A stretch of 64,000 nucleotides of DNA from Fimbriosthenelais zetlandica (Eukaryota): the NCBI GenBank assembly GCA_977030845.1, contig OZ365110.1, positions 53,010,001-53,074,000 on the forward strand, written 5' to 3'. Position numbers and translations under genes: made by a program. A model generated the notes under the pieces. The model saw only the letters and a list, made by a program, of their open reading frames with translations. It was not told the DNA's origin and searched no databases. Positions 5,639 through 27,800 of the stretch are shown in pieces (positions within the stretch are counted from its first letter, which is position 1; each line of letters opens with the position of its first letter).

Positions 5639-8268
5639 CACTGTTAAAAATCCTGGTAATAGCTCACCTCTGGGTAAAGATAATATAACGCGGGGTATAA
5701 AGTTCAGATTTATTAATATTGGGTAGTGTTTTCAGCGGAAAATTGTCATGGTTTCAGGGGTCTTTTACTTCCAACAGCGATTGTTTATCTCTGGGCAAAG
5801 AAACTTATACCCCATTTTACTAACTTCACATTACTATTGACAGCCACCATGTACTAATGCCATAATTACCCTTAATCCTCTCAGTGGCCACTGATGCATG
5901 AAGCCAGCGGCCTAATGCCTAATCCTCCACCTCCCCACCTTAGCTTTTATGGTTATGCATGAGGCTTTGGTGAAATGAATTTCATTTACCACTTTTAAAA
6001 TAATGGTTTCCATTGCATGACATAAAGATGACTTGGAGATGTATTAATTAATTAATTATAATCTATGTTAGAAGCCGAATCTTAAACCCAAGCGTCTCCA
6101 TATCAGGTAAGATGTTTTTGGGAAAGCACAAATTTCCCTCATAAAGCCAGTCAAGCAACGAACATCTTTTTTTTTTAGTTATAATTTTTATAGAACCTGT
6201 TATGGGTGAATACCAGCTCACACTCTTGATTACATGTACTCAAGTTTCTCGTATGATTTTCAGCTGGGGCTCTTTCTATGTTCATTACTACATTGCCTTC
6301 TGTGCAATGGATATTTCTAGAACATGTATAGGCCTATGTACAACCCTGAGGAGGGAGGCATTGGAAATGTCTTGGACAGCTCGGGAGATTGAACCGCCGA
6401 GCCTTCGATCATTGGTCAACCACCCTGTGTGAGCTGGCGCTCCATAACATTTCCATAGTTAAAATGCATACCGGTACCCCACAACCCTCTGGCATTCACT
6501 ATCATCCACATCATTGACTAATACATATTTACAATAATATGTATATGTGCTCATAATAGCACCCAATCAGAGATTAACCACCATGGTTCGATTTAAATCA
6601 AATCTGCCGATTTCAATATTGTCATTATTTTTAATCACTCAGTGATAGTCCGGTGAGTTAATAATATGCCTAAGCATTAGGCATCTTACAATCTAAATGG
6701 CTCCCAGTTACTACCCATGGCCATGATTGGGCTAGGCCCAGCGTGGGGGTTTGTGGAAGTTGGGTAGCTAAGAAAATCGGAAATATTTGTAAGAGATCCA
6801 GTGGGGGTCAACATAAAGGACTAAATGGTTAAATATTTTATTATCAATCCCTAGTTTGTAATGACTAAATTATTAATCGATATACCGCAAAATAGTTTAA
6901 ATAATATACAACCCGACCACCCCTGCAAGCTAGCTAGTACAACCCTTGAATGGACTCACCCAGCCGTTAAAGTGTTACATCATCTTCACCGAGCCGTCTC
7001 TACTAAGGACTTGTCCTGGTTATTTGGAGAGATACATTCGAAGTGACCACAAGTACCGAGTAGGCCTACACACATAGGTAAAAATTTCCTATTCCATTTA
7101 CAATGTTCTATCTTTATAATTGTAGACATATCAGATGGGATGATATTTTCACTCATTTCAACAAATGTAGTTGACATATTATACTCTATATTTTTTTCAG
7201 ATTGATGTGACCAATTAATGCCCGAGAGGTAATTCAAACTGGTTCTGATATTCTGGTGGGTAAAAGAATTTCTTTATTTGTTGAATTTATAACATACGAT
7301 TTTAGTACGGCAACTGGGAAGGTAGTTATCATTGCAATAAAGTGTTATGCTCTGCAATTTGTTTCAGATTCAAGAGAAAGGAAGGCTATAGCCGCTAAAT
7401 CCTAAAATACAGGGAAATGGGACGCATTTGGACAAAAGGGTTAGTACATGTACCTACATGTATCCCACTAACACCCTCGGACTTATCTGCTTGGTGATAC
7501 CAACGAGAGTAAGATAAACCTTATTTTACTCTCGTTGGTGTGACGATTCCCAGGGTGATTTTTCCTGAGGAAGAAGGGAGATTTTGTAAATGTTTTATTC
7601 CTACTGAATAATATTAAACACAAACCTTTGCTCTTCGATTTACAGGTTTAAACTTCACATGGGTTAAGAGACTGGACCTGAACAATAGGCTGGATTACAA
7701 GAACAATAGGCTTGAATCCAGTGTCCCGTCAGACAGGAAGGCGGCCCAACAACAATATAGGCCTTTGTTTCCTGTGACTTTCATCCTCCTGCTTCTCCAT
7801 GTATACTATAATATTATCTTGCAGGAATAGAACAACTCTCCAAACTCCTCAGGAATACAAGGAAGATGTCTCATTAAATACTGATGAGAAAATGATGAAT
7901 TAAGACGAATGAAATTGATGTTGCCCAAAATAAAGATTAATCCTCTACAATAAAGCAGGGAGTGGGGTTGGAGGGGAGGGGGTGTACATTGGTTATATAA
8001 CTATAATCCTTTAATTACCCTATACCCTAAGCTTTCCACCTGCCCCCATTCCGTCACGCCTGGCTGCAGGCACCCGTCATGCTTGGTTGGCCCTGTTAAT
8101 ATTAATCCTTTAATTGGCCTCTCTGCCTCTATAATCGCCACACCTAGCTTTCTTCATGGGGCATAAAAATGGCAGATATAGTTGGGTAGTGAATCCTCAC
8201 CCCTGTCATCGGGCATTGGATTTGGGTAAAGATATCGTTACACCTAGGCGTAATGCTTCATAGCAGTG
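5639..8268. mobile_element. Non-autonomous CACTA/EnSpm-like DNA transposon (2630 bp)
   Basis: Begins CACTGTTAAAAA and ends TTCATAGCAGTG (imperfect TIR, CACTG/CAGTG perfect). Flanked by TA on both sides (5637-38, 8269-70) where the intact SUOX copy has one TA. Subterminal TGGGTAAAGATA-like motifs recur near both ends (~5671, ~8223). No transposase ORF. Confidence 0.8.
6167..6444 (-). mobile_element. tRNA-derived SINE family A, 5'-truncated copy nested in the CACTA-like element
   Basis: Highly similar to 41496-41797, including B-box GGTTCAATC, body and A-rich tail; head truncated. Confidence 0.8.
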
Positions 8269-18800: not shown

Positions 18801-21800
18801 TTTCTTAATAATAATGTATAGATTCTACCCTGCAATATGAAGCGACCTTGCAACGAAATAGATCTACAATTCAGATGGAAGTGCTCAAAATCTTGATAAT
18901 GTAACTCAAAACACGTTCATTTTAGGATTCCGATCCGTGTCTACCCATGGCATATCAGACTTAAGCCGGGCATCCACCTTTCCGATTTTTGTCGGATCCG
19001 ATTTTGATATTTCCCAAAAAAATCGTACAACAATCTGATCCGATTTGGAACCGATTTTGAGGATCCGATTTCATTTCCACAGTACCGATTTTTCTGGTAG
19101 GATTTTTGATCGGTTCTGGGCAAAATCGGATCCGATCTTATTTCCATATGTCGGATTTGATCGGATCCGATTTTCTACATGGCTGCAAGTCGGTATCAGA
19201 TCATGAAAATCTGATCCGATCTTATTTCCATATGTCCGATTTGATCTGATCGTATCCGAAAATCGGTAGGGGTACCGATTGGGACGAACCAGACCGTCCC
19301 AGTCGGTAGTACATACCGATTTTGATCCGATTTAAAATCGGTATCAGATTGTTATTTCCACCTTTCAGACTCAATTTTCAAACGGATCAGATTTCAAAAA
19401 AAATCTGATCCGATCAATTTTGACCCGATAATCGGATAGGTGGAATCCAGATTGTTGTACGATTTTTTTGGGAAATATCAAAATCGGATCCGACAAAAAT
19501 CGGAAAGGTGGATGCCCGGCTTAAGTTACCGGTACACATAGCAGCCTGATAGTGATAGTAGCCTACTGATACAACACACCCGAGATGGAGTATTCATTCG
19601 CATTGATTGTATAGAGGGTTCCCAGGGACACTTATCGGCCCCGCCCCCTTATGGCGCTCAGCCAATCACGTAGCGTCGTGTCATGATTGACAGCGTCGCC
19701 ATAACGACGACGTCAGCGGACCTCGGTCAAACAACTTGACGCTCGGTCAACGACATCGACGATATCGGCGATGAGCGTTACTTTTCTTTACCTTTGGACA
19801 GCTGACCGGTATAAATAAAGATGGTTAAGAGATGTGCTTATGGGAGGTGCAACTCCGACACCCGTTATCCCGAAAGGGTAGCGGGTGTGGGATTTTTCCC
19901 ATTCCCTAAACCCAAAACGAAGCTGGAGCAATGCTTATCGTGGATCAAGACCTGTGGACGACCACACAGCGACTTGAACATAGGCCTTGTAAATAAGGAC
20001 ACCTACGTATGCTCAAAGGTAAGCATCCGCATTAATTAATAGAAATATTGGCAATGGACAATATTAGCATCCAAAAAGTGAGGCCTATACAATCTTTGTC
20101 ATAGATATCTCATGCTATGGTATGGGTTGTTAAGACCTTGATAACTCGTAGTTACCAGGCACGGTTGGTTGGGCATTTTGAAACAATGTTGCAAAATGTG
20201 ACACCCATGAAATGCAGGGCCCTCCCTCAGTTAGGATCAGTTAGGCCTAAGATCGCCTAACGGATTGCCGGTATTTATAATGGAATGTTTAATTTAAGAC
20301 TTTATAGTTCCGTATGGTGATCGAGAAAAGTAAATATTTTGTCTTTGAATCGCCTTATGAACTATTTGAGCATTCAAATTAGCTGTACCTACCGCTACTG
20401 AAACTAACTTCTAACTAGCCTAGTTACTAGGGATTCTTGGGAGTGCCCTGAAAATGTGACCTAAATCATCAATGTGAGGCTCCACAGCCTTCACATGGCT
20501 TTAGCCTCTAGACTAGAGCCTGAGTAGAGGCCTACAACTGCCTGCTTGTGCATCTCAGAAAGTGCTTTTCCCCAAACACAGGTAGGGCTAGATAGTCATA
20601 TTGTCCTTTTTCCAAATCACAGTACCGGTACACACTAGCTGTGAAGATCATAACCACTATACTACTACTAGACTAGTTTTGTTACTTTGTAGGCCTAAAG
20701 CTCTGGATAATTTTATCTCTAAGTTAACTCTAACCGCTGACGAGCCTAAACAAAATATCATAAGCCTACCAAAATCTACTCTTACAACACATAAGTTTCA
20801 GAGAAACAAATTGTCTACCGTACATTATATTACTCTCGTACTTGTCCTACTACTAGTGTAGTCTTAGTTAAGAGATGGAATCTAGGCCTAGACTACAGCC
20901 CTATACTTTGGATTTTTTTACTATGTATTCGTTCTGCGTGGGGCGATATTACCGGTATTTAATATTTACATTAACTTTATTAGCTTATTTTGATACATTT
21001 ATTTATTATTGGGGAATATGGTACGTTTCATAAATGAAAACAAAATACAATAAACACTAACAATCATAGTATTGGCAATTGCTCATTGTTTATATATATT
21101 TTTATTATACATTCCGAATCATGAGCTAAAATGGACATACGAGTGATTAATATTAACCCACAATTTTTATATAATTTTATCTTAAATATCAAATATATAC
21201 ACACGTTCACAATCAAATATAATATACATTCCAGCACTTCCTGCAGGGACGCCCTACCCAGGAATACCCAGATCCAATACCAGCTGATGGAGCTGAAGTT
21301 AGGCGCACAAGGCGACATATAAAAAGAAGTATTAGTGCTGGGTAGGTTTGCCTCTAGACATGAATTTAAAATTCTCTTAATCATACATCTCATACTTCAT
21401 AGTGAACAGGCTTTATTCACCACATATTCTTATACTAGGACACAATAAACTTTCAGAATTGATGAACAGGAAGGAAAGAGGAGGAAAGATTTAGAGGGAC
21501 AACCAGAAAGAACAGCACTGCCACATTCAGAACAGTCAGGTGGGAAATCATTTTCTGTGATAACAAATATTCAGAAACACGTTTAAACTTCTTTCGCAAA
21601 AATGAAGATATTCATATTCAAGAAATTTACTTCTGTAAAGGTAATATTAGAATAGTAACAGTAAATTACTACCTGTCTGAATAATAACGCTATGTGGGCT
21701 TAAATACATAGGCCCTATAATAAGCTATATTGATCTATATAGACTTACAGTCACTATGTTTTGCTATCAATATGTATGGATCTATCTTATTCATGACATG

Positions 21801-24800
21801 CATTTCCAAGGACGGATAATGACTGAAAAACAATTTATGATGAATGTGCCTCTAAGAAGGGTACAGCATGCTCAACATAAAATTTGTACAAGACATCAAG
21901 CATCATTTGCATGGTGGTTTTATCAGGCAGGATACGCTCAATGTGGAGCCCTTTCCTTGTATACACAATGAAATCGCAAAAGGGTGCCCCAGTGACTAGG
22001 AGTTGACCCTGAACTTGGTAATAATACGTGTGATTTTCAGGCAGCTTGATAAGATCATTTTCATTTCTGAGACAAAAGTTTTTGAGTGACTGGACTGCCT
22101 CCTCAATGGTCAGGTCTCTTGCAGTATATGGTGCCTTTATTTCAATGATGCCTGTCAACCCCTCATCACAAACTTTACCATCAGGTGTAGCCCCCAAAAA
22201 ACTTATAGATGGATTTACTACCAGACCACACCCATGTACATGTACATTCTTCCTCCTCTCACAGTACACCCCTTTAGCTACACACTCCTGGTTTTTACCA
22301 TACGACATGGCTGGCGTCTGTACTGAACGACCAGCAAATAATGATGACAAAAACTTATCGTTTACTGCTTTTTTCCTCTTTATGATGTCGCCAAACCGGG
22401 ACGCAGTTACTCTTCTCCTCCTTTCCTCATGCCACTCAGGCGAGTCGCTCTGACACACCGTCCTCTGCTCCAGTGCTTCGGACTGAGCTTGGGTGATGGT
22501 GACATGTGTAGGACAGGTGGTAGCTAACTGGGGAGGGATATCCACCGGGACCTGGAGTGGGAATCTGGTGACACCACACCTGACGTCTGGGCACGGGTTA
22601 GGACGGTTGAAGAGTGGAAGCTAAAAAAAACAGAAATATTTGTTCTTAACAAATTTGACAACAATTTTTAAATATTTATTATAATTATTATTATGCAGGT
22701 CTTGAGATATTATCTCAGGTGTGTCAGGAGCAACAAGACCACAGTCTCCATCTTCTGGAAACCGCCATTGAAATAAGACAGACACAAGGTGAGAACGACA
22801 TATTGAGGGAAAAACTTGCAAAGAATGAAATAATAGTATCTCAGATGAAGGCCTCTCAGATGAAGGTTGAAAATGATCTCAAAAAACAAGTAGCGGCATT
22901 GGAGCTCAAAAACATCGCCCTCCAGAGAGATATAGCTGAAGCTACAAGACCTCAGCCTGATTCACCTCAGCTAAGTAGTTGCAACCAATGTAAATTATTT
23001 AGCCCTTCCACAGTTGTTACATGTAAGGTCAAAGATTCTCTTGTGTTTTACACTGGGTTTGATTTGCCTACTTTCAAGATTTTATTTAAATTCCTTGTCC
23101 CTCATGAAGGCAAAAACCCCGTGTTGTATTCAGAAAATAAGGCTTCTTCTTTAGACATGTGTTTGGAGTGCCAATTGTTTCTAGTACTTTGTCGTTTAAG
23201 GAAAGGTTTTTTGTTGAAGGATTTGGCTATCCGCTTCAACATCAGTGTTCAGGTAGTTAGTGTAGTGTTTAATAGCTGGATTAGGTACATGTATGTCAGA
23301 CTTGGCTCTCTATCCTGGTGGCCGAGTCGAGAGGTCATAATAGAAAAGATGACTGCCAGGTACAGGGAGGAGTTCCCGACATCTCTTGCTATCATTGATT
23401 GCACTGAGATCAAAACAGAAAAACCATCATCCCTAAAGACCCAGTCACAGTGTTATTCTGAATATAAATCCAGCCCAACTCTGAAGGCCCTAATTGTAAC
23501 GGACCCCAGGGGATCACTGATGTTCACGACCGCATTATTTTCTGGGTCCATTTCTGATAAGGAAATATGTGTGCAAGGTTGTTTTTTCCAGCTCCTAAAA
23601 GAACTTAAAGAAAGTGGCAAAATACAGTCGGGAGATGCCATCATGGCCGACAAAGGTTTTCTTATTGAAGAGAAATTAGGAGAATTGGGTTTACTACTAA
23701 ACATACCACCTCTGTCATCCAAATCACGTCAAATGCCACCAGGTGATGTAGCCTTGACAAAGAAAATAGCTAGTCACAGAATAACTGTGGAAAGAGCCAT
23801 CAAGAGGATTAAGGATTTTAGGATCCTGGACAGACGGATTCCATCCTCTCTTTTCCACAATATAAATGAAATATGGCTTGTATGCACATATTTAACATCT
23901 TTCCAAAATATCCTGATCAAAGAAGACACAGTGCGCTAAATTAAATTAGATTAAAACATAGAACTTGAACCAACGAATTCTCATGATAGATATACCAATC
24001 TAATACATGTATATTTTTCAGGTAAGAAACGGTGGATGTAACTCTTTCAAGGCAAGTCATTCAGAATGTATATCACTGTATGTGTAGAATAACATGATTA
24101 TAACATATTCATATAACCCGTTTTCATTTTACCAGCCGATTTTTACTGGTGCGAGTGACATGAACTGCTCTGTCATTTTCACATAACTCATTATGTACTA
24201 AAAATATCCAAGGGGAAATCCGATAATATGATTAGATACCATATTTATAGATCTATATTTATGAGAGATTATATAGATATTTATTACGTTGGGCTATATA
24301 TATATATTCAAAATTAGGATTTCCCTTTGAATTTCAGTGTATTCATACCTGTGTCATAACCATGTTTGGCGTCTCGTCTTCTAACAAGTTTGTTTGTGGC
24401 TTGGTTAATTGTATCTCTATAAATAATTTCTGTGACTAATCAGCTTACCCAACTCAATTTTAACCAGTATTCAGTAACTGTTAGGGGGCAACCATTATGT
24501 GATTATGTTCATAAACTGATATAAGTATATAGTGTGAGGAGGACGCACTATCGCCTCGTCCCACTAGGTGAGAGCTCAGTGCCTGCCGGTCGCATTATCT
24601 GACCTGACCAGTCACGGTCACTCCACCTCTCACACCACACCTGTCACTTGTATTTTTTTTTATTCATGCAGGGGGGGGGGGGGGGGGGGGGGGTAAATAT
24701 GGCATGGATAAGGAATGATTATCTCGCGTCCTATTTGGGAATTTTAATTGCACCCCTATTTTCTGTGATTGATATCTGACGTATATATGTAATTTAATGT

Positions 24801-27800
24801 GTAATAATATATGTAATAAAAAAACCCAGCTAGACCCGCCGTCCCACCTCCATCTAATGGTCGCCCCTATATCAATTTGTATTCATTCAGGTACATACTA
24901 ATCCTTAACACATATGGAAATTTGATTACCATCTCACTCTGGCATATTTATATGGAAAAGGGTTCAGTCCCCAAACCTTTCCCCTCTTAATCCCTTCTTT
25001 TATAATCTGTGTTCTTTTTTCCTATTCATATTATCAAAGGGACGTGTATGTTATGTGTCCGTGATATTATAAATTGAAGTGAATACCTGGTACTGTAGTG
25101 CTGAACATTTCTGGACTGGTCCGTATTCAGTTTCTACATTAGGCTCGTCCTCAGTCAAGAGGTATGACATCGCTGCCGTCCTTTTTATCTTTAGTTCTCT
25201 GATTTCGTCATTGTTGGCTAGGGGGATGCTGGAAAGTATACACAGTCTATGTACTGATTGGTAATATACACATAAATACAATGTTTAAAATGGACTAAAT
25301 ATGATGTATGTTTACTGTAATGTAGGCCTGCTTTTATGAACCATTTAATGATTAAGTTTGGATGAAATAAAGCAGGCTATAATCATCAGAGTATAAATGT
25401 ATCTTAATATTATTTACCTATGGATAGGGAAATTGGAAGTCACTGGCTTTCGCTTCCTTTCCTTTTCTGTGGCCGGATTGGCCATGACCAGTGATGTCGC
25501 TGGTTCTGGCCGAATGATTTTTCCCCTGGGTTTGTGCCACTGCTGGGGAAGGCTTGTACAGGATAGTGCATCAGGGCACTCAGCCAATTCTTGTTCTTGG
25601 TACTGGACGAGGGTCAAGAACAGTCCTATTACATGGGCACATGACCCTGCGAGACTGAAATAAGAAGGAAGTATTTAATGTTAAAATGATAGCAATGTAA
25701 ATAACAATATTGGTAGAGTGTTTAGGTATATGTTAACTTCTGCATTTCTTTCTGAAGATAATCTTACTAAGTGTACGGTACCTAGCAGGCCAAATATTTC
25801 AAGGTTTAGGCCAGTGCCTATATGAGCCTAAACTTAATTTCTTTTCTGACAATGAGAATATATATAGATCATCTAGTCCTATATTTCGTGTATGTGCCGG
25901 CTTATATATGGCATAAGCTTCGTTACAGACACATGTGTTAATTTAATCAATGGATGGAAAATAATTATTCCCCAAATAAAAAAAAATAGCCCACAAATAT
26001 TATGTCTGTTATTTTTTATTTGCGTCTGTTAACTAAAAAATAGATTGAATTAATGTAGATCTAGGCCCAGTTGAAAAGTTCATGTAGGCCTATAAAAAAA
26101 GGCTTTAAGTTTGAGCCTAGAATAGATGTAGGTAGGCCTACCGTCAAGCCTATTTCAGTACTCTACTACTAGTACTAGTACTACTAGCCTAACTTGGCCA
26201 ATGGAGACCAATATATGATTTTACTGCCTTGCAAAATTACTAGTTCAACAATTATATAGGCCCATTCTGATCAATGTATAATGAACTTAAACCCACACCT
26301 TTATTAAATTCGTTCCCCTTCATTAAACTTTAGGCCTATCTTGACAGGTAGGCCTTCACTAAGCTACAGAACCAGGCTACAAAAGGGGGCGGGGCATGGG
26401 CGGGCGGGGTCGGGGTGGCCCTGGTTTGGGAAGTTTGAGGGAAGCTGTCTGATGATTAAGAGGGAATGAAAGTCTGTCATCATCTTTTAATTATATAATT
26501 GAAATATATTTACCCTATGGTGCAGGAACAGGTGCTAAAAGTCACTTTCCTCTGGATTGTATTGATGTTTAAGTTCACTTTGTGGGGTTGCTCATGTTTT
26601 CTCATGCTCCGGTAGCATTCCGCTTTCACGCTGATGTCTCCCTCCGTTGGCTCCATTCGCACATTATGAATATACCCCAATAACGAATAATTAACTGCCC
26701 TGTCCCTAATCCTCGCTGATATCGCACTTTCAAAAAAATTTAAACTTAAATCCCCCGGCAAAACATCCACCCGCTTTGTTGTCATCTTGACGCTTGACCT
26801 AATAACGCGGCAAACGTCATCGCATACGTCATTGTTTGACCGAGGTCGGTCAGCGTCGTTAGGGGGATTCTACGTCGCTAAGGGGGGCGTGGCTACGCGG
26901 CGCGCTGGGAACCCTCTATTATCGCCCAGACCAAAGCTTCATCCGATATATCTATGTCATTTCATACAGTTACATTAAAATTTTAAATAAATATTCATAA
27001 AATCACACTTGCCACACATTCTCTACATTTGATCATGCCATAAACCCAAGGAGGTTGTCAAGAAGAGTCGAAATAGACTTTGTAGATTTAGGAAACGATC
27101 ATCCCTAAGCTCCATTGTGAAAGGTCAAGGTCACTAAGTCAGTTTACTTTCGTAAAAAAAAAAGTCAGTCAAAATGTGGCCATTGTGAAACAACTTGTAT
27201 TTTAAATTGTATGTTAATACCCCTGCAGTATTTAAATGTTATATTACCGGGATAGTTTTTGGCCAAAAGAAGTGCGAAACGGATCTTGACCACGGAGAGC
27301 TGCAGCCAGTGCAGGTCGCTTTGGAGACCGCCGATATGTCGACTCACTCCACTTCCACACCCCACCAAATCGCAAATAATTAACAAAACCACATAAAAAC
27401 TTGTAAGGATTCAGAAAAATATCCCTAAATCAGTATGGTGATATTTAATTTACATTCAATTCATAATTCTGAACAATATCCATGCAGGATTTGCAGCACG
27501 TCCTCCTGGAGAAAAAACTTGGCACAGTGCCAGACGCATGGAACGTTTGTGACACGGACATGTTAAAATCTAGTTATGGCCAAATAAAACGCCATAAATC
27601 ACGAATAAATAATTTTTAAAAATAAAAATAAATTAGACAGTGCAAATTTACACATGTTACTCCGTGTCGTATTAAGTTTCTATGCATTTATTCCACGGAG
27701 AAATGTATTTTATCATAAGTTGAACTTCAGTGTCAACAGTGAGGTGAAATAAAATCCCGGGCGATACCGGCGCGAGGGCCAAGTTATTGACGGCGCCTGC

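What the first reader, a model, noticed from the sequence alone, without database searches (positions are those of the whole stretch)
21835..26785. SWIM-YqaJ exonuclease as a transposon accessory enzyme of unresolved function
The 484-aa protein keeps the PD-(D/E)xK catalytic motifs ([17 protein letters not shown]) behind a SWIM finger. Lambda-exonuclease/YqaJ enzymes are 5'-3' dsDNA resection nucleases that partner single-strand annealing proteins in phage recombination. Canonical Harbinger elements use a Myb/SANT DNA-binding partner instead. Inference: this element may process donor or target ends by resection, a two-enzyme transposition mechanism that is not worked out as far as I know.
Basis: partly seen in the sequence, partly recalled or inferred. 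Interest (0 to 1): 0.7.

Follow-up and report, generated by a model that had tools for sequence, protein, structure and literature searches.

The report
ISL2EU transposon's lambda-exonuclease partner gene
The SWIM-YqaJ nuclease gene is real and looks catalytically intact, but it is the already published second gene of ISL2EU-type jumping genes, so this is an apparently intact new copy of a known kind whose nuclease still has no tested role.

Summary
On the minus strand, four exons (26785-26514, 25654-25418, 25246 or 25228-25087, 22620-21835) give an open frame of 484 or 478 codons. It has a CxCx7CxH SWIM-type motif split over exons 1 and 2, and a YqaJ/lambda-exonuclease domain in the last exon. 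That domain keeps every catalytic residue and the arginine that aligns with R28 of lambda exonuclease.

The gene lies inside a 7,305-bp element (19613-26917) with 13-bp terminal inverted repeats and AT on both flanks. The element also carries a three-exon THAP-HTH-DDE_Tnp_4 transposase gene.

THAP-DDE transposase plus YqaJ protein plus a 2-bp AT target duplication is the published definition of ISL2EU elements (PHIS superfamily; PMC4482050, PMC4122938, PMC9179366). So this is not an odd Harbinger.

New detail: the two genes are interleaved, each with its main exon inside an intron of the other. The same order occurs in a snail, an oyster and amphioxus. A more distant lineage has plain convergent ORFs.

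My mechanism is inference only: 5'-3' resection of transposase-made breaks that steers repair towards homologous recombination. No RNA run was listed.

This scan has already filed several ISL2EU copies in the same genome.

The parts
19611..19612 (.). left AT flank (putative 2-bp target site duplication)
   Evidence: AT also at 26918-26919. AT is palindromic and no empty site was available, so this is consistent rather than proven.
19613..19625 (+). left terminal inverted repeat, AGAGGGTTCCCAG
   Evidence: the only two exact matches in the window are the two element ends, in inverted orientation.
19707..19734 (.). left subterminal repeat; its inverted partner is 26832-26859. It holds the motif CTCGGTCAA, which occurs twice on the left and once, inverted, on the right.
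   Evidence: (I3, 82% complementary)
19821..20018 (+). transposase exon 1: THAP zinc finger up to ...CSK, donor AAAG|GTAAGC
   Evidence: Pfam THAP E 2e-5
21235..21328 (+). transposase exon 2: starts HF..., completing the THAP C2CH. The donor (21297, 21328 or 21334) is unresolved.
   Evidence: the same small exon is present in amphioxus L004
21835..22620 (-). nuclease exon 4: YqaJ/lambda-exonuclease domain with stop codon. It lies inside transposase intron 2.
22699..23939 (+). transposase exon 3: coiled-coil region, HTH_Tnp_4, DDE_Tnp_4 (D227, D311, E358 of the 406-aa ORF that starts at 22719). The acceptor is 22699, 22707 or 22719. It lies inside nuclease intron 3.
25087..25246 (-). nuclease exon 3: conserved ...SYLL...G.VQ..S.L.YQ segment. 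Acceptor 25246 gives 484 aa; acceptor 25228 gives 478 aa and is favoured by homology.
25418..25654 (-). nuclease exon 2: second half of the SWIM motif (CAH), invariant Q.W.KPR motif, RKRKP basic patch
26514..26785 (-). nuclease exon 1: ATG 132 bp from the right end, pre-SWIM domain, first half of the SWIM motif (CSC)
26905..26917 (-). right terminal inverted repeat
26918..26919 (.). right AT flank

Best explanation
The stretch is the second gene of an apparently coding-intact ISL2EU-type DNA transposon (PHIS superfamily) spanning 19613-26917. The gene encodes a protein of about 480 aa: an N-terminal SWIM-type zinc-motif domain, a conserved linker (Q.W.KPR motif and an RKRKP basic patch that may be a nuclear localisation signal), and a C-terminal lambda-exonuclease/YqaJ PD-(D/E)xK domain. 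The identity and the element membership are shown (about 0.9).

The mechanism is inferred. I put it at about 0.35 as the main role. The THAP-DDE transposase binds the ends and makes the double-strand breaks. The nuclease loads on the 5'-phosphorylated ends that DDE hydrolysis leaves and degrades the 5' strand in the 5'-3' direction, leaving 3' single-stranded tails. This commits the donor gap, and perhaps the excised ends, to homology-directed repair rather than end joining. Repair from the sister chromatid or homologue would restore the element at the donor site, so each jump adds a copy.
For: Element and membership:
- TIRs and AT flanks.
- THAP, HTH_Tnp_4 and DDE_Tnp_4 in the transposase and YqaJ in the partner.
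- Published ISL2EU description.

Linkage:
- The same nuclease-transposase pairing is found in Batillaria (L001), Ostrea (L002), Branchiostoma (L003, L004) and two metagenome contigs (L005, L006).

Catalytic competence:
- E112, E160, K162, Q202 and Q204 are invariant, and R67 and D147 are at least 90% conserved, in 27 homologues from several phyla.
- A profile alignment puts R67 on lambda exonuclease R28, ATPDG on SPDG and IEIK on LELK.
- The AlphaFold2 model has pLDDT 92.8. Its best Foldseek matches are LHK-Exo and lambda exonuclease, probability 1.0, TM up to 0.78 normalised by the target.

Selection:
- dN/dS is about 0.09 for the nuclease exon between two amphioxus lineages.

Theme:
- Other DNA transposon lineages also carry end-processing factors: KolobokE a lambda-exonuclease-like nuclease, KolobokH a RecQ helicase, KolobokD a DnaQ exonuclease (PMC9587614).
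- From general knowledge: lambda-type exonucleases make 3' tails for recombination, and related PIF/Harbinger transposases excise in heterologous cells with only a Myb partner. This suggests the DDE_Tnp_4 core needs no second nuclease to cut.
Against: - No biochemical or genetic data exist for any ISL2EU nuclease in the papers found. PMC4482050 states the function is unknown.
- The element has no single-strand annealing partner: its other ORFs have no Pfam hit.
- No RNA evidence that this copy is expressed or spliced as modelled.
- Oligomeric state and any transposase contact could not be tested.
- The dS in the selection test (1.86) is near saturation, and one of the two copies compared has lost most of its transposase.
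- This copy has Ala where most homologues have Cys after the catalytic Lys (IEIKA against EIKC). The effect is unknown.
Confidence: 0.8

Rival explanations
1. Second-strand nuclease, as TnsA is for Tn7. The DDE transposase only nicks the 3' ends. The PD-(D/E)xK partner frees the 5' strand, so it is required for excision itself, and losing it would block cut-and-paste or make transposition replicative.
For: - The nuclease is co-inherited with the transposase in every locus examined.
- The catalytic residues are invariant.
- From general knowledge: TnsA is also a PD-(D/E)xK enzyme paired with a DDE transposase, and some IS5-family elements process the 5' strand late.
Against: - The fold and the arginine that aligns with lambda exonuclease R28 match end-dependent exonucleases rather than restriction-like endonucleases. 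That R28 contacts the 5' phosphate is recalled from the lambda exonuclease literature, not checked here.
- From general knowledge: lambda exonuclease needs a duplex end, and homologous PIF/Harbinger transposases make double-strand breaks without such a partner.
Confidence: 0.2
2. Mainly a non-catalytic partner, replacing the Harbinger Myb-like protein. The SWIM domain and linker bind the transposon ends or the transposase and bring it into the nucleus, and nuclease activity is secondary.
For: - The N-terminal domain and the Q.W.KPR and RKRKP motifs are conserved across phyla.
- The papers call the ORF2 product a DNA-binding protein.
- An unchecked note from this scan (s1-184613) reports a predicted docking of the nuclease on the transposase.
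Against: - The transposase already carries THAP and HTH DNA-binding domains.
- Invariant catalytic residues and dN/dS of about 0.09 on the nuclease exon indicate selection on the enzyme itself.
Confidence: 0.1
3. Chance nesting: a Harbinger-like transposon landed in an intron of an unrelated host SWIM-YqaJ gene, so the two genes are not one element.
For: The main transposase exon lies antisense inside an intron of the nuclease gene, as a nested insertion would look.
Against: - One pair of TIRs encloses both genes.
- The THAP exons of the transposase lie on the far side of the nuclease exon.
- The identical exon order recurs in a snail, an oyster and amphioxus at 44-62% protein identity.
Confidence: 0.02

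Closest known systems
ISL2EU elements (PHIS superfamily; Repbase ISL2EU; PMC4482050, PMC4122938)
   Same: THAP + HTH + DDE_Tnp_4 transposase, a second gene with a YqaJ exonuclease domain, AT on both flanks, an animal-type host (nearest protein relatives are from molluscs and amphioxus), short TIRs.
   Different: - The TIR starts AGAGGG rather than the usual GG.
- The element is 7.3 kb against a mean of about 4.8 kb.
- Both genes are spliced and interleaved. This arrangement is not mentioned in the three papers read, which also do not mention a SWIM motif.
- The nearest database proteins are only 52-56% identical.
Lambda exonuclease / LHK-Exo (PDB 1avq, 3sm4, 3syy)
   Same: Fold, the D/E/K catalytic residues, the QxQ motif, and an arginine that aligns with lambda R28.
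   Different: Carries an extra region of about 220 aa with the SWIM domain and linker, has no annealing-protein partner gene, and sits in a eukaryotic transposon. The trimeric ring was not tested.
KolobokE transposons (PMC9587614)
   Same: A DDE-type DNA transposon that carries a lambda-exonuclease-like PD-(D/E)xK nuclease of unknown role.
   Different: [quoted passage not shown]
Tn7 TnsA-TnsB
   Same: A PD-(D/E)xK nuclease paired with a DDE transposase: a two-enzyme logic.
   Different: TnsA is a restriction-endonuclease-like enzyme that cuts the 5' ends. Here the fold is that of an end-dependent exonuclease, and no sequence relationship was tested or claimed.
PIF/Harbinger elements
   Same: Related DDE_Tnp_4 transposase and a two-gene layout.
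   Different: Harbinger has a Myb/SANT partner, a 3-bp duplication and no THAP. None of these applies here.

Membership tests
ISL2EU (PHIS superfamily) | Transposase with DDE_Tnp_4 catalytic domain plus HTH and N-terminal THAP | tested here: met
   Pfam DDE_Tnp_4 E 2.6e-38 and HTH_Tnp_4 E 2.3e-13; THAP E 2e-5, with the C2CH completed by exon 2; D227, D311 and E358 invariant
ISL2EU (PHIS superfamily) | Second ORF with a YqaJ exonuclease domain | tested here: met
   Pfam YqaJ E 1.7e-15, inside the same TIR pair
ISL2EU (PHIS superfamily) | 2-bp target site duplication, typically AT | tested here: inconclusive
   AT on both flanks. AT is palindromic and no empty site was available. A 3-bp direct duplication does not fit.
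ISL2EU (PHIS superfamily) | TIRs usually starting GG | tested here: not met
   The TIR is AGAGGGTTCCCAG. The paper says 'usually', so this is not a strict criterion.
ISL2EU (PHIS superfamily) | Transposase falls in the ISL2EU clade in a DDE-domain tree | not tested
   No Repbase reference sequences were at hand.
YqaJ / lambda exonuclease family | PD-(D/E)xK residues (Asp, Glu-x-Lys) and the QxQ motif | tested here: met
   D147, E160, K162, Q202 and Q204 conserved in 27 homologues and aligned to lambda exonuclease and LHK-Exo
YqaJ / lambda exonuclease family | Lambda-exonuclease fold | tested here: met
   Model pLDDT 92.8; Foldseek hits 3sz4, 3syy, 1avq and 3sm4, E 1e-11 to 1e-9
YqaJ / lambda exonuclease family | Arginine that binds the 5' phosphate (lambda R28) | tested here: met
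   R67 aligns with R28 in the profile alignment and is at least 90% conserved. That R28 binds the 5' phosphate is recalled from the literature, not checked here.
YqaJ / lambda exonuclease family | Toroidal trimer | not testable with these tools
   Only single-chain prediction is available.
YqaJ / lambda exonuclease family | Adjacent single-strand annealing protein partner | tested here: not met
   The other ORFs of the element have no Pfam hit, and the rest of the element is intron sequence.
SWIM zinc finger | CxCxnCxH motif | tested here: met
   CSC ends exon 1 and CAH starts exon 2. Both are conserved in all copies and contiguous in P0014 and P0088.
SWIM zinc finger | Match to the Pfam SWIM model | tested here: not met
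   No hit at E <= 0.1 in four homologous database proteins, two of which (P0014, P0088) carry the complete motif, nor in the exon pieces. The joined exon 1+2 model was not searched, by instruction.

The most novel reading that the evidence does not exclude
The nuclease is an obligatory catalytic partner. By resecting transposase-made breaks it forces homologous repair of the donor gap and so turns a cut-and-paste element into a net-replicative one. The interleaved exon layout, conserved from molluscs to amphioxus, would then be a selected lock: a deletion of either gene's main exon also removes intron sequence of the other gene.
Probability: 0.2. Interest if true: 0.65.

Novelty: new member of a known kind. 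Interest (0 to 1): 0.3.

Why it matters
The role of the ISL2EU nuclease is a real open question. The papers state it is unknown, and several DNA transposon lineages have independently picked up end-processing enzymes. An apparently intact copy with clear ends, such as this one, is usable material for a reconstituted transposition assay. That assay could show whether a transposon-encoded resection enzyme biases break repair in the element's favour. The finding itself adds no new kind of system. What it adds is a new family, a worked gene model, and the observation that the interleaved two-gene layout is old and conserved.

Tried and rejected
- **Three-exon model:** the obvious three-exon model of the nuclease gene was out of frame. 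Homologues revealed the missing middle exon.
- **Two-exon transposase model:** it lacked the THAP histidine. A small HF... exon at 21235 was found by comparison with amphioxus.
- **Pfam SWIM:** no hit in the exon pieces or in the homologous database proteins.
- **TIR sequence in other loci:** this element's TIR sequence is absent from L001 and L002. The L001 ends stayed ambiguous. L002 has a 24-nt inverted pair at 7058/15002 that brackets the element.
- **P0090 (Exaiptasia):** no contig on record.
- **Nested-insertion reading:** rejected.
- **dN/dS against this window's own copy:** not attempted, because the nearest sequences are only 52-56% identical and synonymous sites would be saturated.
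- **Large representative-protein search:** not used, because the family scans did not leave the protein open.
- **Joined-model steps:** Exons were searched singly by reference. Scripts joined exons only to test reading-frame continuity.
Full report
**What is there.** The minus strand between 26785 and 21835 carries a spliced gene.
- The last exon (22620-21835) is one 261-codon open stretch. It hits Pfam YqaJ (E 1.7e-15, 58 bits against a cut-off of 22) and, more weakly, Viral_alk_exo.
- Exon 1 (26785-26514) starts at an ATG and ends ...CSCTIG at a GGTAAA donor.
- Exon 2 (25654-25418) follows a pyrimidine-rich acceptor and opens with ...GSCAHVIG, so the CxCx7CxH SWIM-type motif is formed only by splicing.
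- These three exons alone are out of frame at the obvious splice sites.
- Database homologues with both the SWIM motif and the YqaJ domain (P0014 Batillaria, P0084; the shorter P0026 Ostrea model begins after the motif) have a conserved segment...SYL...G.V..GSPLSYQ, between the two domains. The window holds it at about 25228-25087.
The second is favoured because homology to the amphioxus copies starts exactly there and the pyrimidine tract is better.

**It is inside a transposon, and both genes belong to it.**
- The 13-mer AGAGGGTTCCCAG occurs exactly twice in the 64 kb, at 19613 (+) and 26917 (-). A second inverted pair lies just inside each end (19707-19734 and 26832-26859). AT lies directly outside both ends.
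- On the plus strand the element carries a transposase gene of three exons:
  - 19821-20018 holds a THAP finger up to ...CSK (Pfam THAP E 2e-5).
  - 21235 to about 21328 starts HF and so completes the C2CH. It was found by comparison with amphioxus.
  - About 22699/22719-23939 holds HTH_Tnp_4 (E 2.3e-13) and DDE_Tnp_4 (E 2.6e-38). D227, D311 and E358 are invariant against three other copies.
- The nuclease exon 4 lies in transposase intron 2, and the main transposase exon lies in nuclease intron 3. The two convergent genes are interleaved.

**This is not a chance nesting.** I mapped the window's exon translations by tblastn onto loci fetched around homologous proteins.
- The same order (SWIM exons 1-3, transposase main exon antisense, YqaJ exon, THAP exon antisense) occurs in the snail Batillaria (L001), the oyster Ostrea (L002) and amphioxus (L004). 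Protein identity is 44-62% for the transposase and 48-49% for the nuclease.
- In L004 the NCBI annotation has a 525-aa THAP/HTH_Tnp_4/DDE_Tnp_4 gene whose span contains the YqaJ gene on the other strand.
- A more distant lineage (L005 and L006, 37% identity) has the plain layout. In L005 a 436-aa nuclease ORF converges on a 528-aa transposase ORF, both without introns in the parts seen. L006 ends inside its transposase ORF.
- The interleaving is therefore derived, but old.

**What is known.**
- Three papers describe exactly this gene content as the ISL2EU group of the PHIS (PIF/Harbinger-ISL2EU-Spy) superfamily: a transposase with DDE, HTH and THAP, a second ORF with a YqaJ exonuclease domain, and a 2-bp duplication that is typically AT (PMC4482050; PMC9179366; PMC4122938).
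- The pairing is therefore the defining feature of a catalogued group, not an exception to Harbinger.
- None of the three papers mentions SWIM or the interleaved layout. That is an absence in those texts only.
- KolobokE transposons carry a lambda-exonuclease-like nuclease too. KolobokH carries a RecQ helicase and KolobokD a DnaQ exonuclease (PMC9587614).

**Is the enzyme likely active?**
- In an alignment of 27 homologues from molluscs, amphioxus, cnidarians and unnamed assemblies, E112, E160, K162, Q202 and Q204 are invariant. R67 and D147 are at least 90% conserved (numbering of the 261-aa exon piece).
- A profile of that alignment matches LHK-Exo (E 2e-25) and lambda exonuclease (E 1e-9). 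The printed alignment puts R67 on lambda R28, the GK..E glutamate on the GKQYE glutamate, ATPDG on SPDG and IEIK on LELK.
- That R28 is the 5'-phosphate contact is my recollection of the lambda exonuclease structural work. I did not check it here.
- The AlphaFold2 model of the exon piece is confident (mean pLDDT 92.8, pTM 0.91). Its best Foldseek matches are LHK-Exo and lambda exonuclease at probability 1.0. Next come mimivirus R354, herpesvirus SOX and BGLF5, Cas4 and MGME1.
- Between two amphioxus lineages the nuclease exon has dN 0.16 and dS 1.86, a ratio of about 0.09. dS is close to saturation, and one of the two copies (L003) has lost most of its transposase. I take this only as clear evidence that dN is far below dS.
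- This window's copy keeps all conserved residues. It has Ala rather than the common Cys after the catalytic Lys.

**The rest of the protein.**
- Exon 1 encodes a domain with invariant ...Y..A...RS.RK...PH... leading to C.C.
- Exon 2 has an invariant T...Q.W.KPR...I motif and an RKRKP patch that looks like a nuclear localisation signal.
- Pfam's SWIM model does not hit the homologous database proteins. "SWIM" is therefore a motif-level call, backed only by a UniRef label on P0014.

**How it most likely works.**
- Shown: a lambda-exonuclease-fold protein with its catalytic residues conserved is stably linked to a THAP-DDE transposase, and in the one pair compared its nuclease exon has far fewer non-synonymous than synonymous changes.
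- Inferred, step by step:
  - DDE hydrolysis leaves 3'-OH and 5'-phosphate ends, which are the substrate of lambda-type exonucleases.
  - The transposase has its own DNA-binding domains, and its Harbinger relatives excise without a second nuclease. The partner is therefore more likely to act after cutting.
  - 5'-3' resection gives 3' tails that commit a break to homology-directed repair. At the donor gap that would restore the element and give a net gain of one copy.
- I hold this at about 0.35.
- Rivals are a Tn7 TnsA-like role in freeing the 5' strand (0.2) and a mainly non-catalytic, Myb-like recruiting role (0.1). The remainder is "something else".
- No annealing protein is encoded in the element.

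**Limits.**
- No RNA run was listed.
- The host organism was not identified.
- Other copies in this genome could not be read, so the age, copy number and activity of this copy are open.

**Earlier notes of this scan.** Notes s1-184613, s1-189679, s1-217075 and s1-188363 report further ISL2EU copies and a host fusion in the same genome. Note s1-210704 covers this same element's interleaving. I reached the ISL2EU reading from the papers before seeing those notes, and I tested the interleaving myself.

**Verdict.** This is a new member of a known kind. Interest is modest, because the open question about the nuclease is real but already stated in the literature.

Noticed in passing
window 19821-26785; L001 7899-12125; L002 7169-14834; L004 4262-10463: The two convergent genes are interleaved, each with its main exon inside an intron of the other. 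The same exon order is kept in a snail, an oyster and amphioxus, while a distant lineage (L005 4093-7063) has plain convergent ORFs. The layout is not mentioned in the three ISL2EU papers read.
   Followed up: yes
L003 5202-8666 (Branchiostoma floridae): In this copy all four nuclease exons are present and the last is an annotated intact gene. The transposase main exon is reduced to a remnant of about 100 aa and no THAP exon is found. It could be a nuclease-only derivative or an early domestication.
   Followed up: partly
window 18959-19526: A 568-bp MITE-like element with 79-nt perfect terminal inverted repeats and internal AAAATCGGATCCGAT repeats lies 86 bp to the left of the ISL2EU element.
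   Followed up: partly
window 19638-19670 and 26880-26895: Both ends carry a GC-box-like run (GCCCCGCCCCC / CCACGCCCCCC), and the left end also has a CCAAT-like box. The two ATGs are 208 and 132 bp from the termini. Each end may act as an inward-firing promoter, which would produce overlapping antisense transcripts.
   Followed up: no
window 19722, 19742 and 26836: The motif CTCGGTCAA occurs twice near the left end and once, inverted, near the right end, and nowhere else in the 64 kb. It is a candidate transposase (THAP) binding site.
   Followed up: partly
L002 822-2645 (Ostrea edulis): A second, more divergent YqaJ-like stretch (30% identity) with a DDE_Tnp_4-like fragment next to it lies about 5 kb from the main oyster copy.
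   Followed up: no
window 24660-24700: A long G run (read as poly-Pro or poly-Gly in translations) lies in the shared intron region of the element.
   Followed up: no
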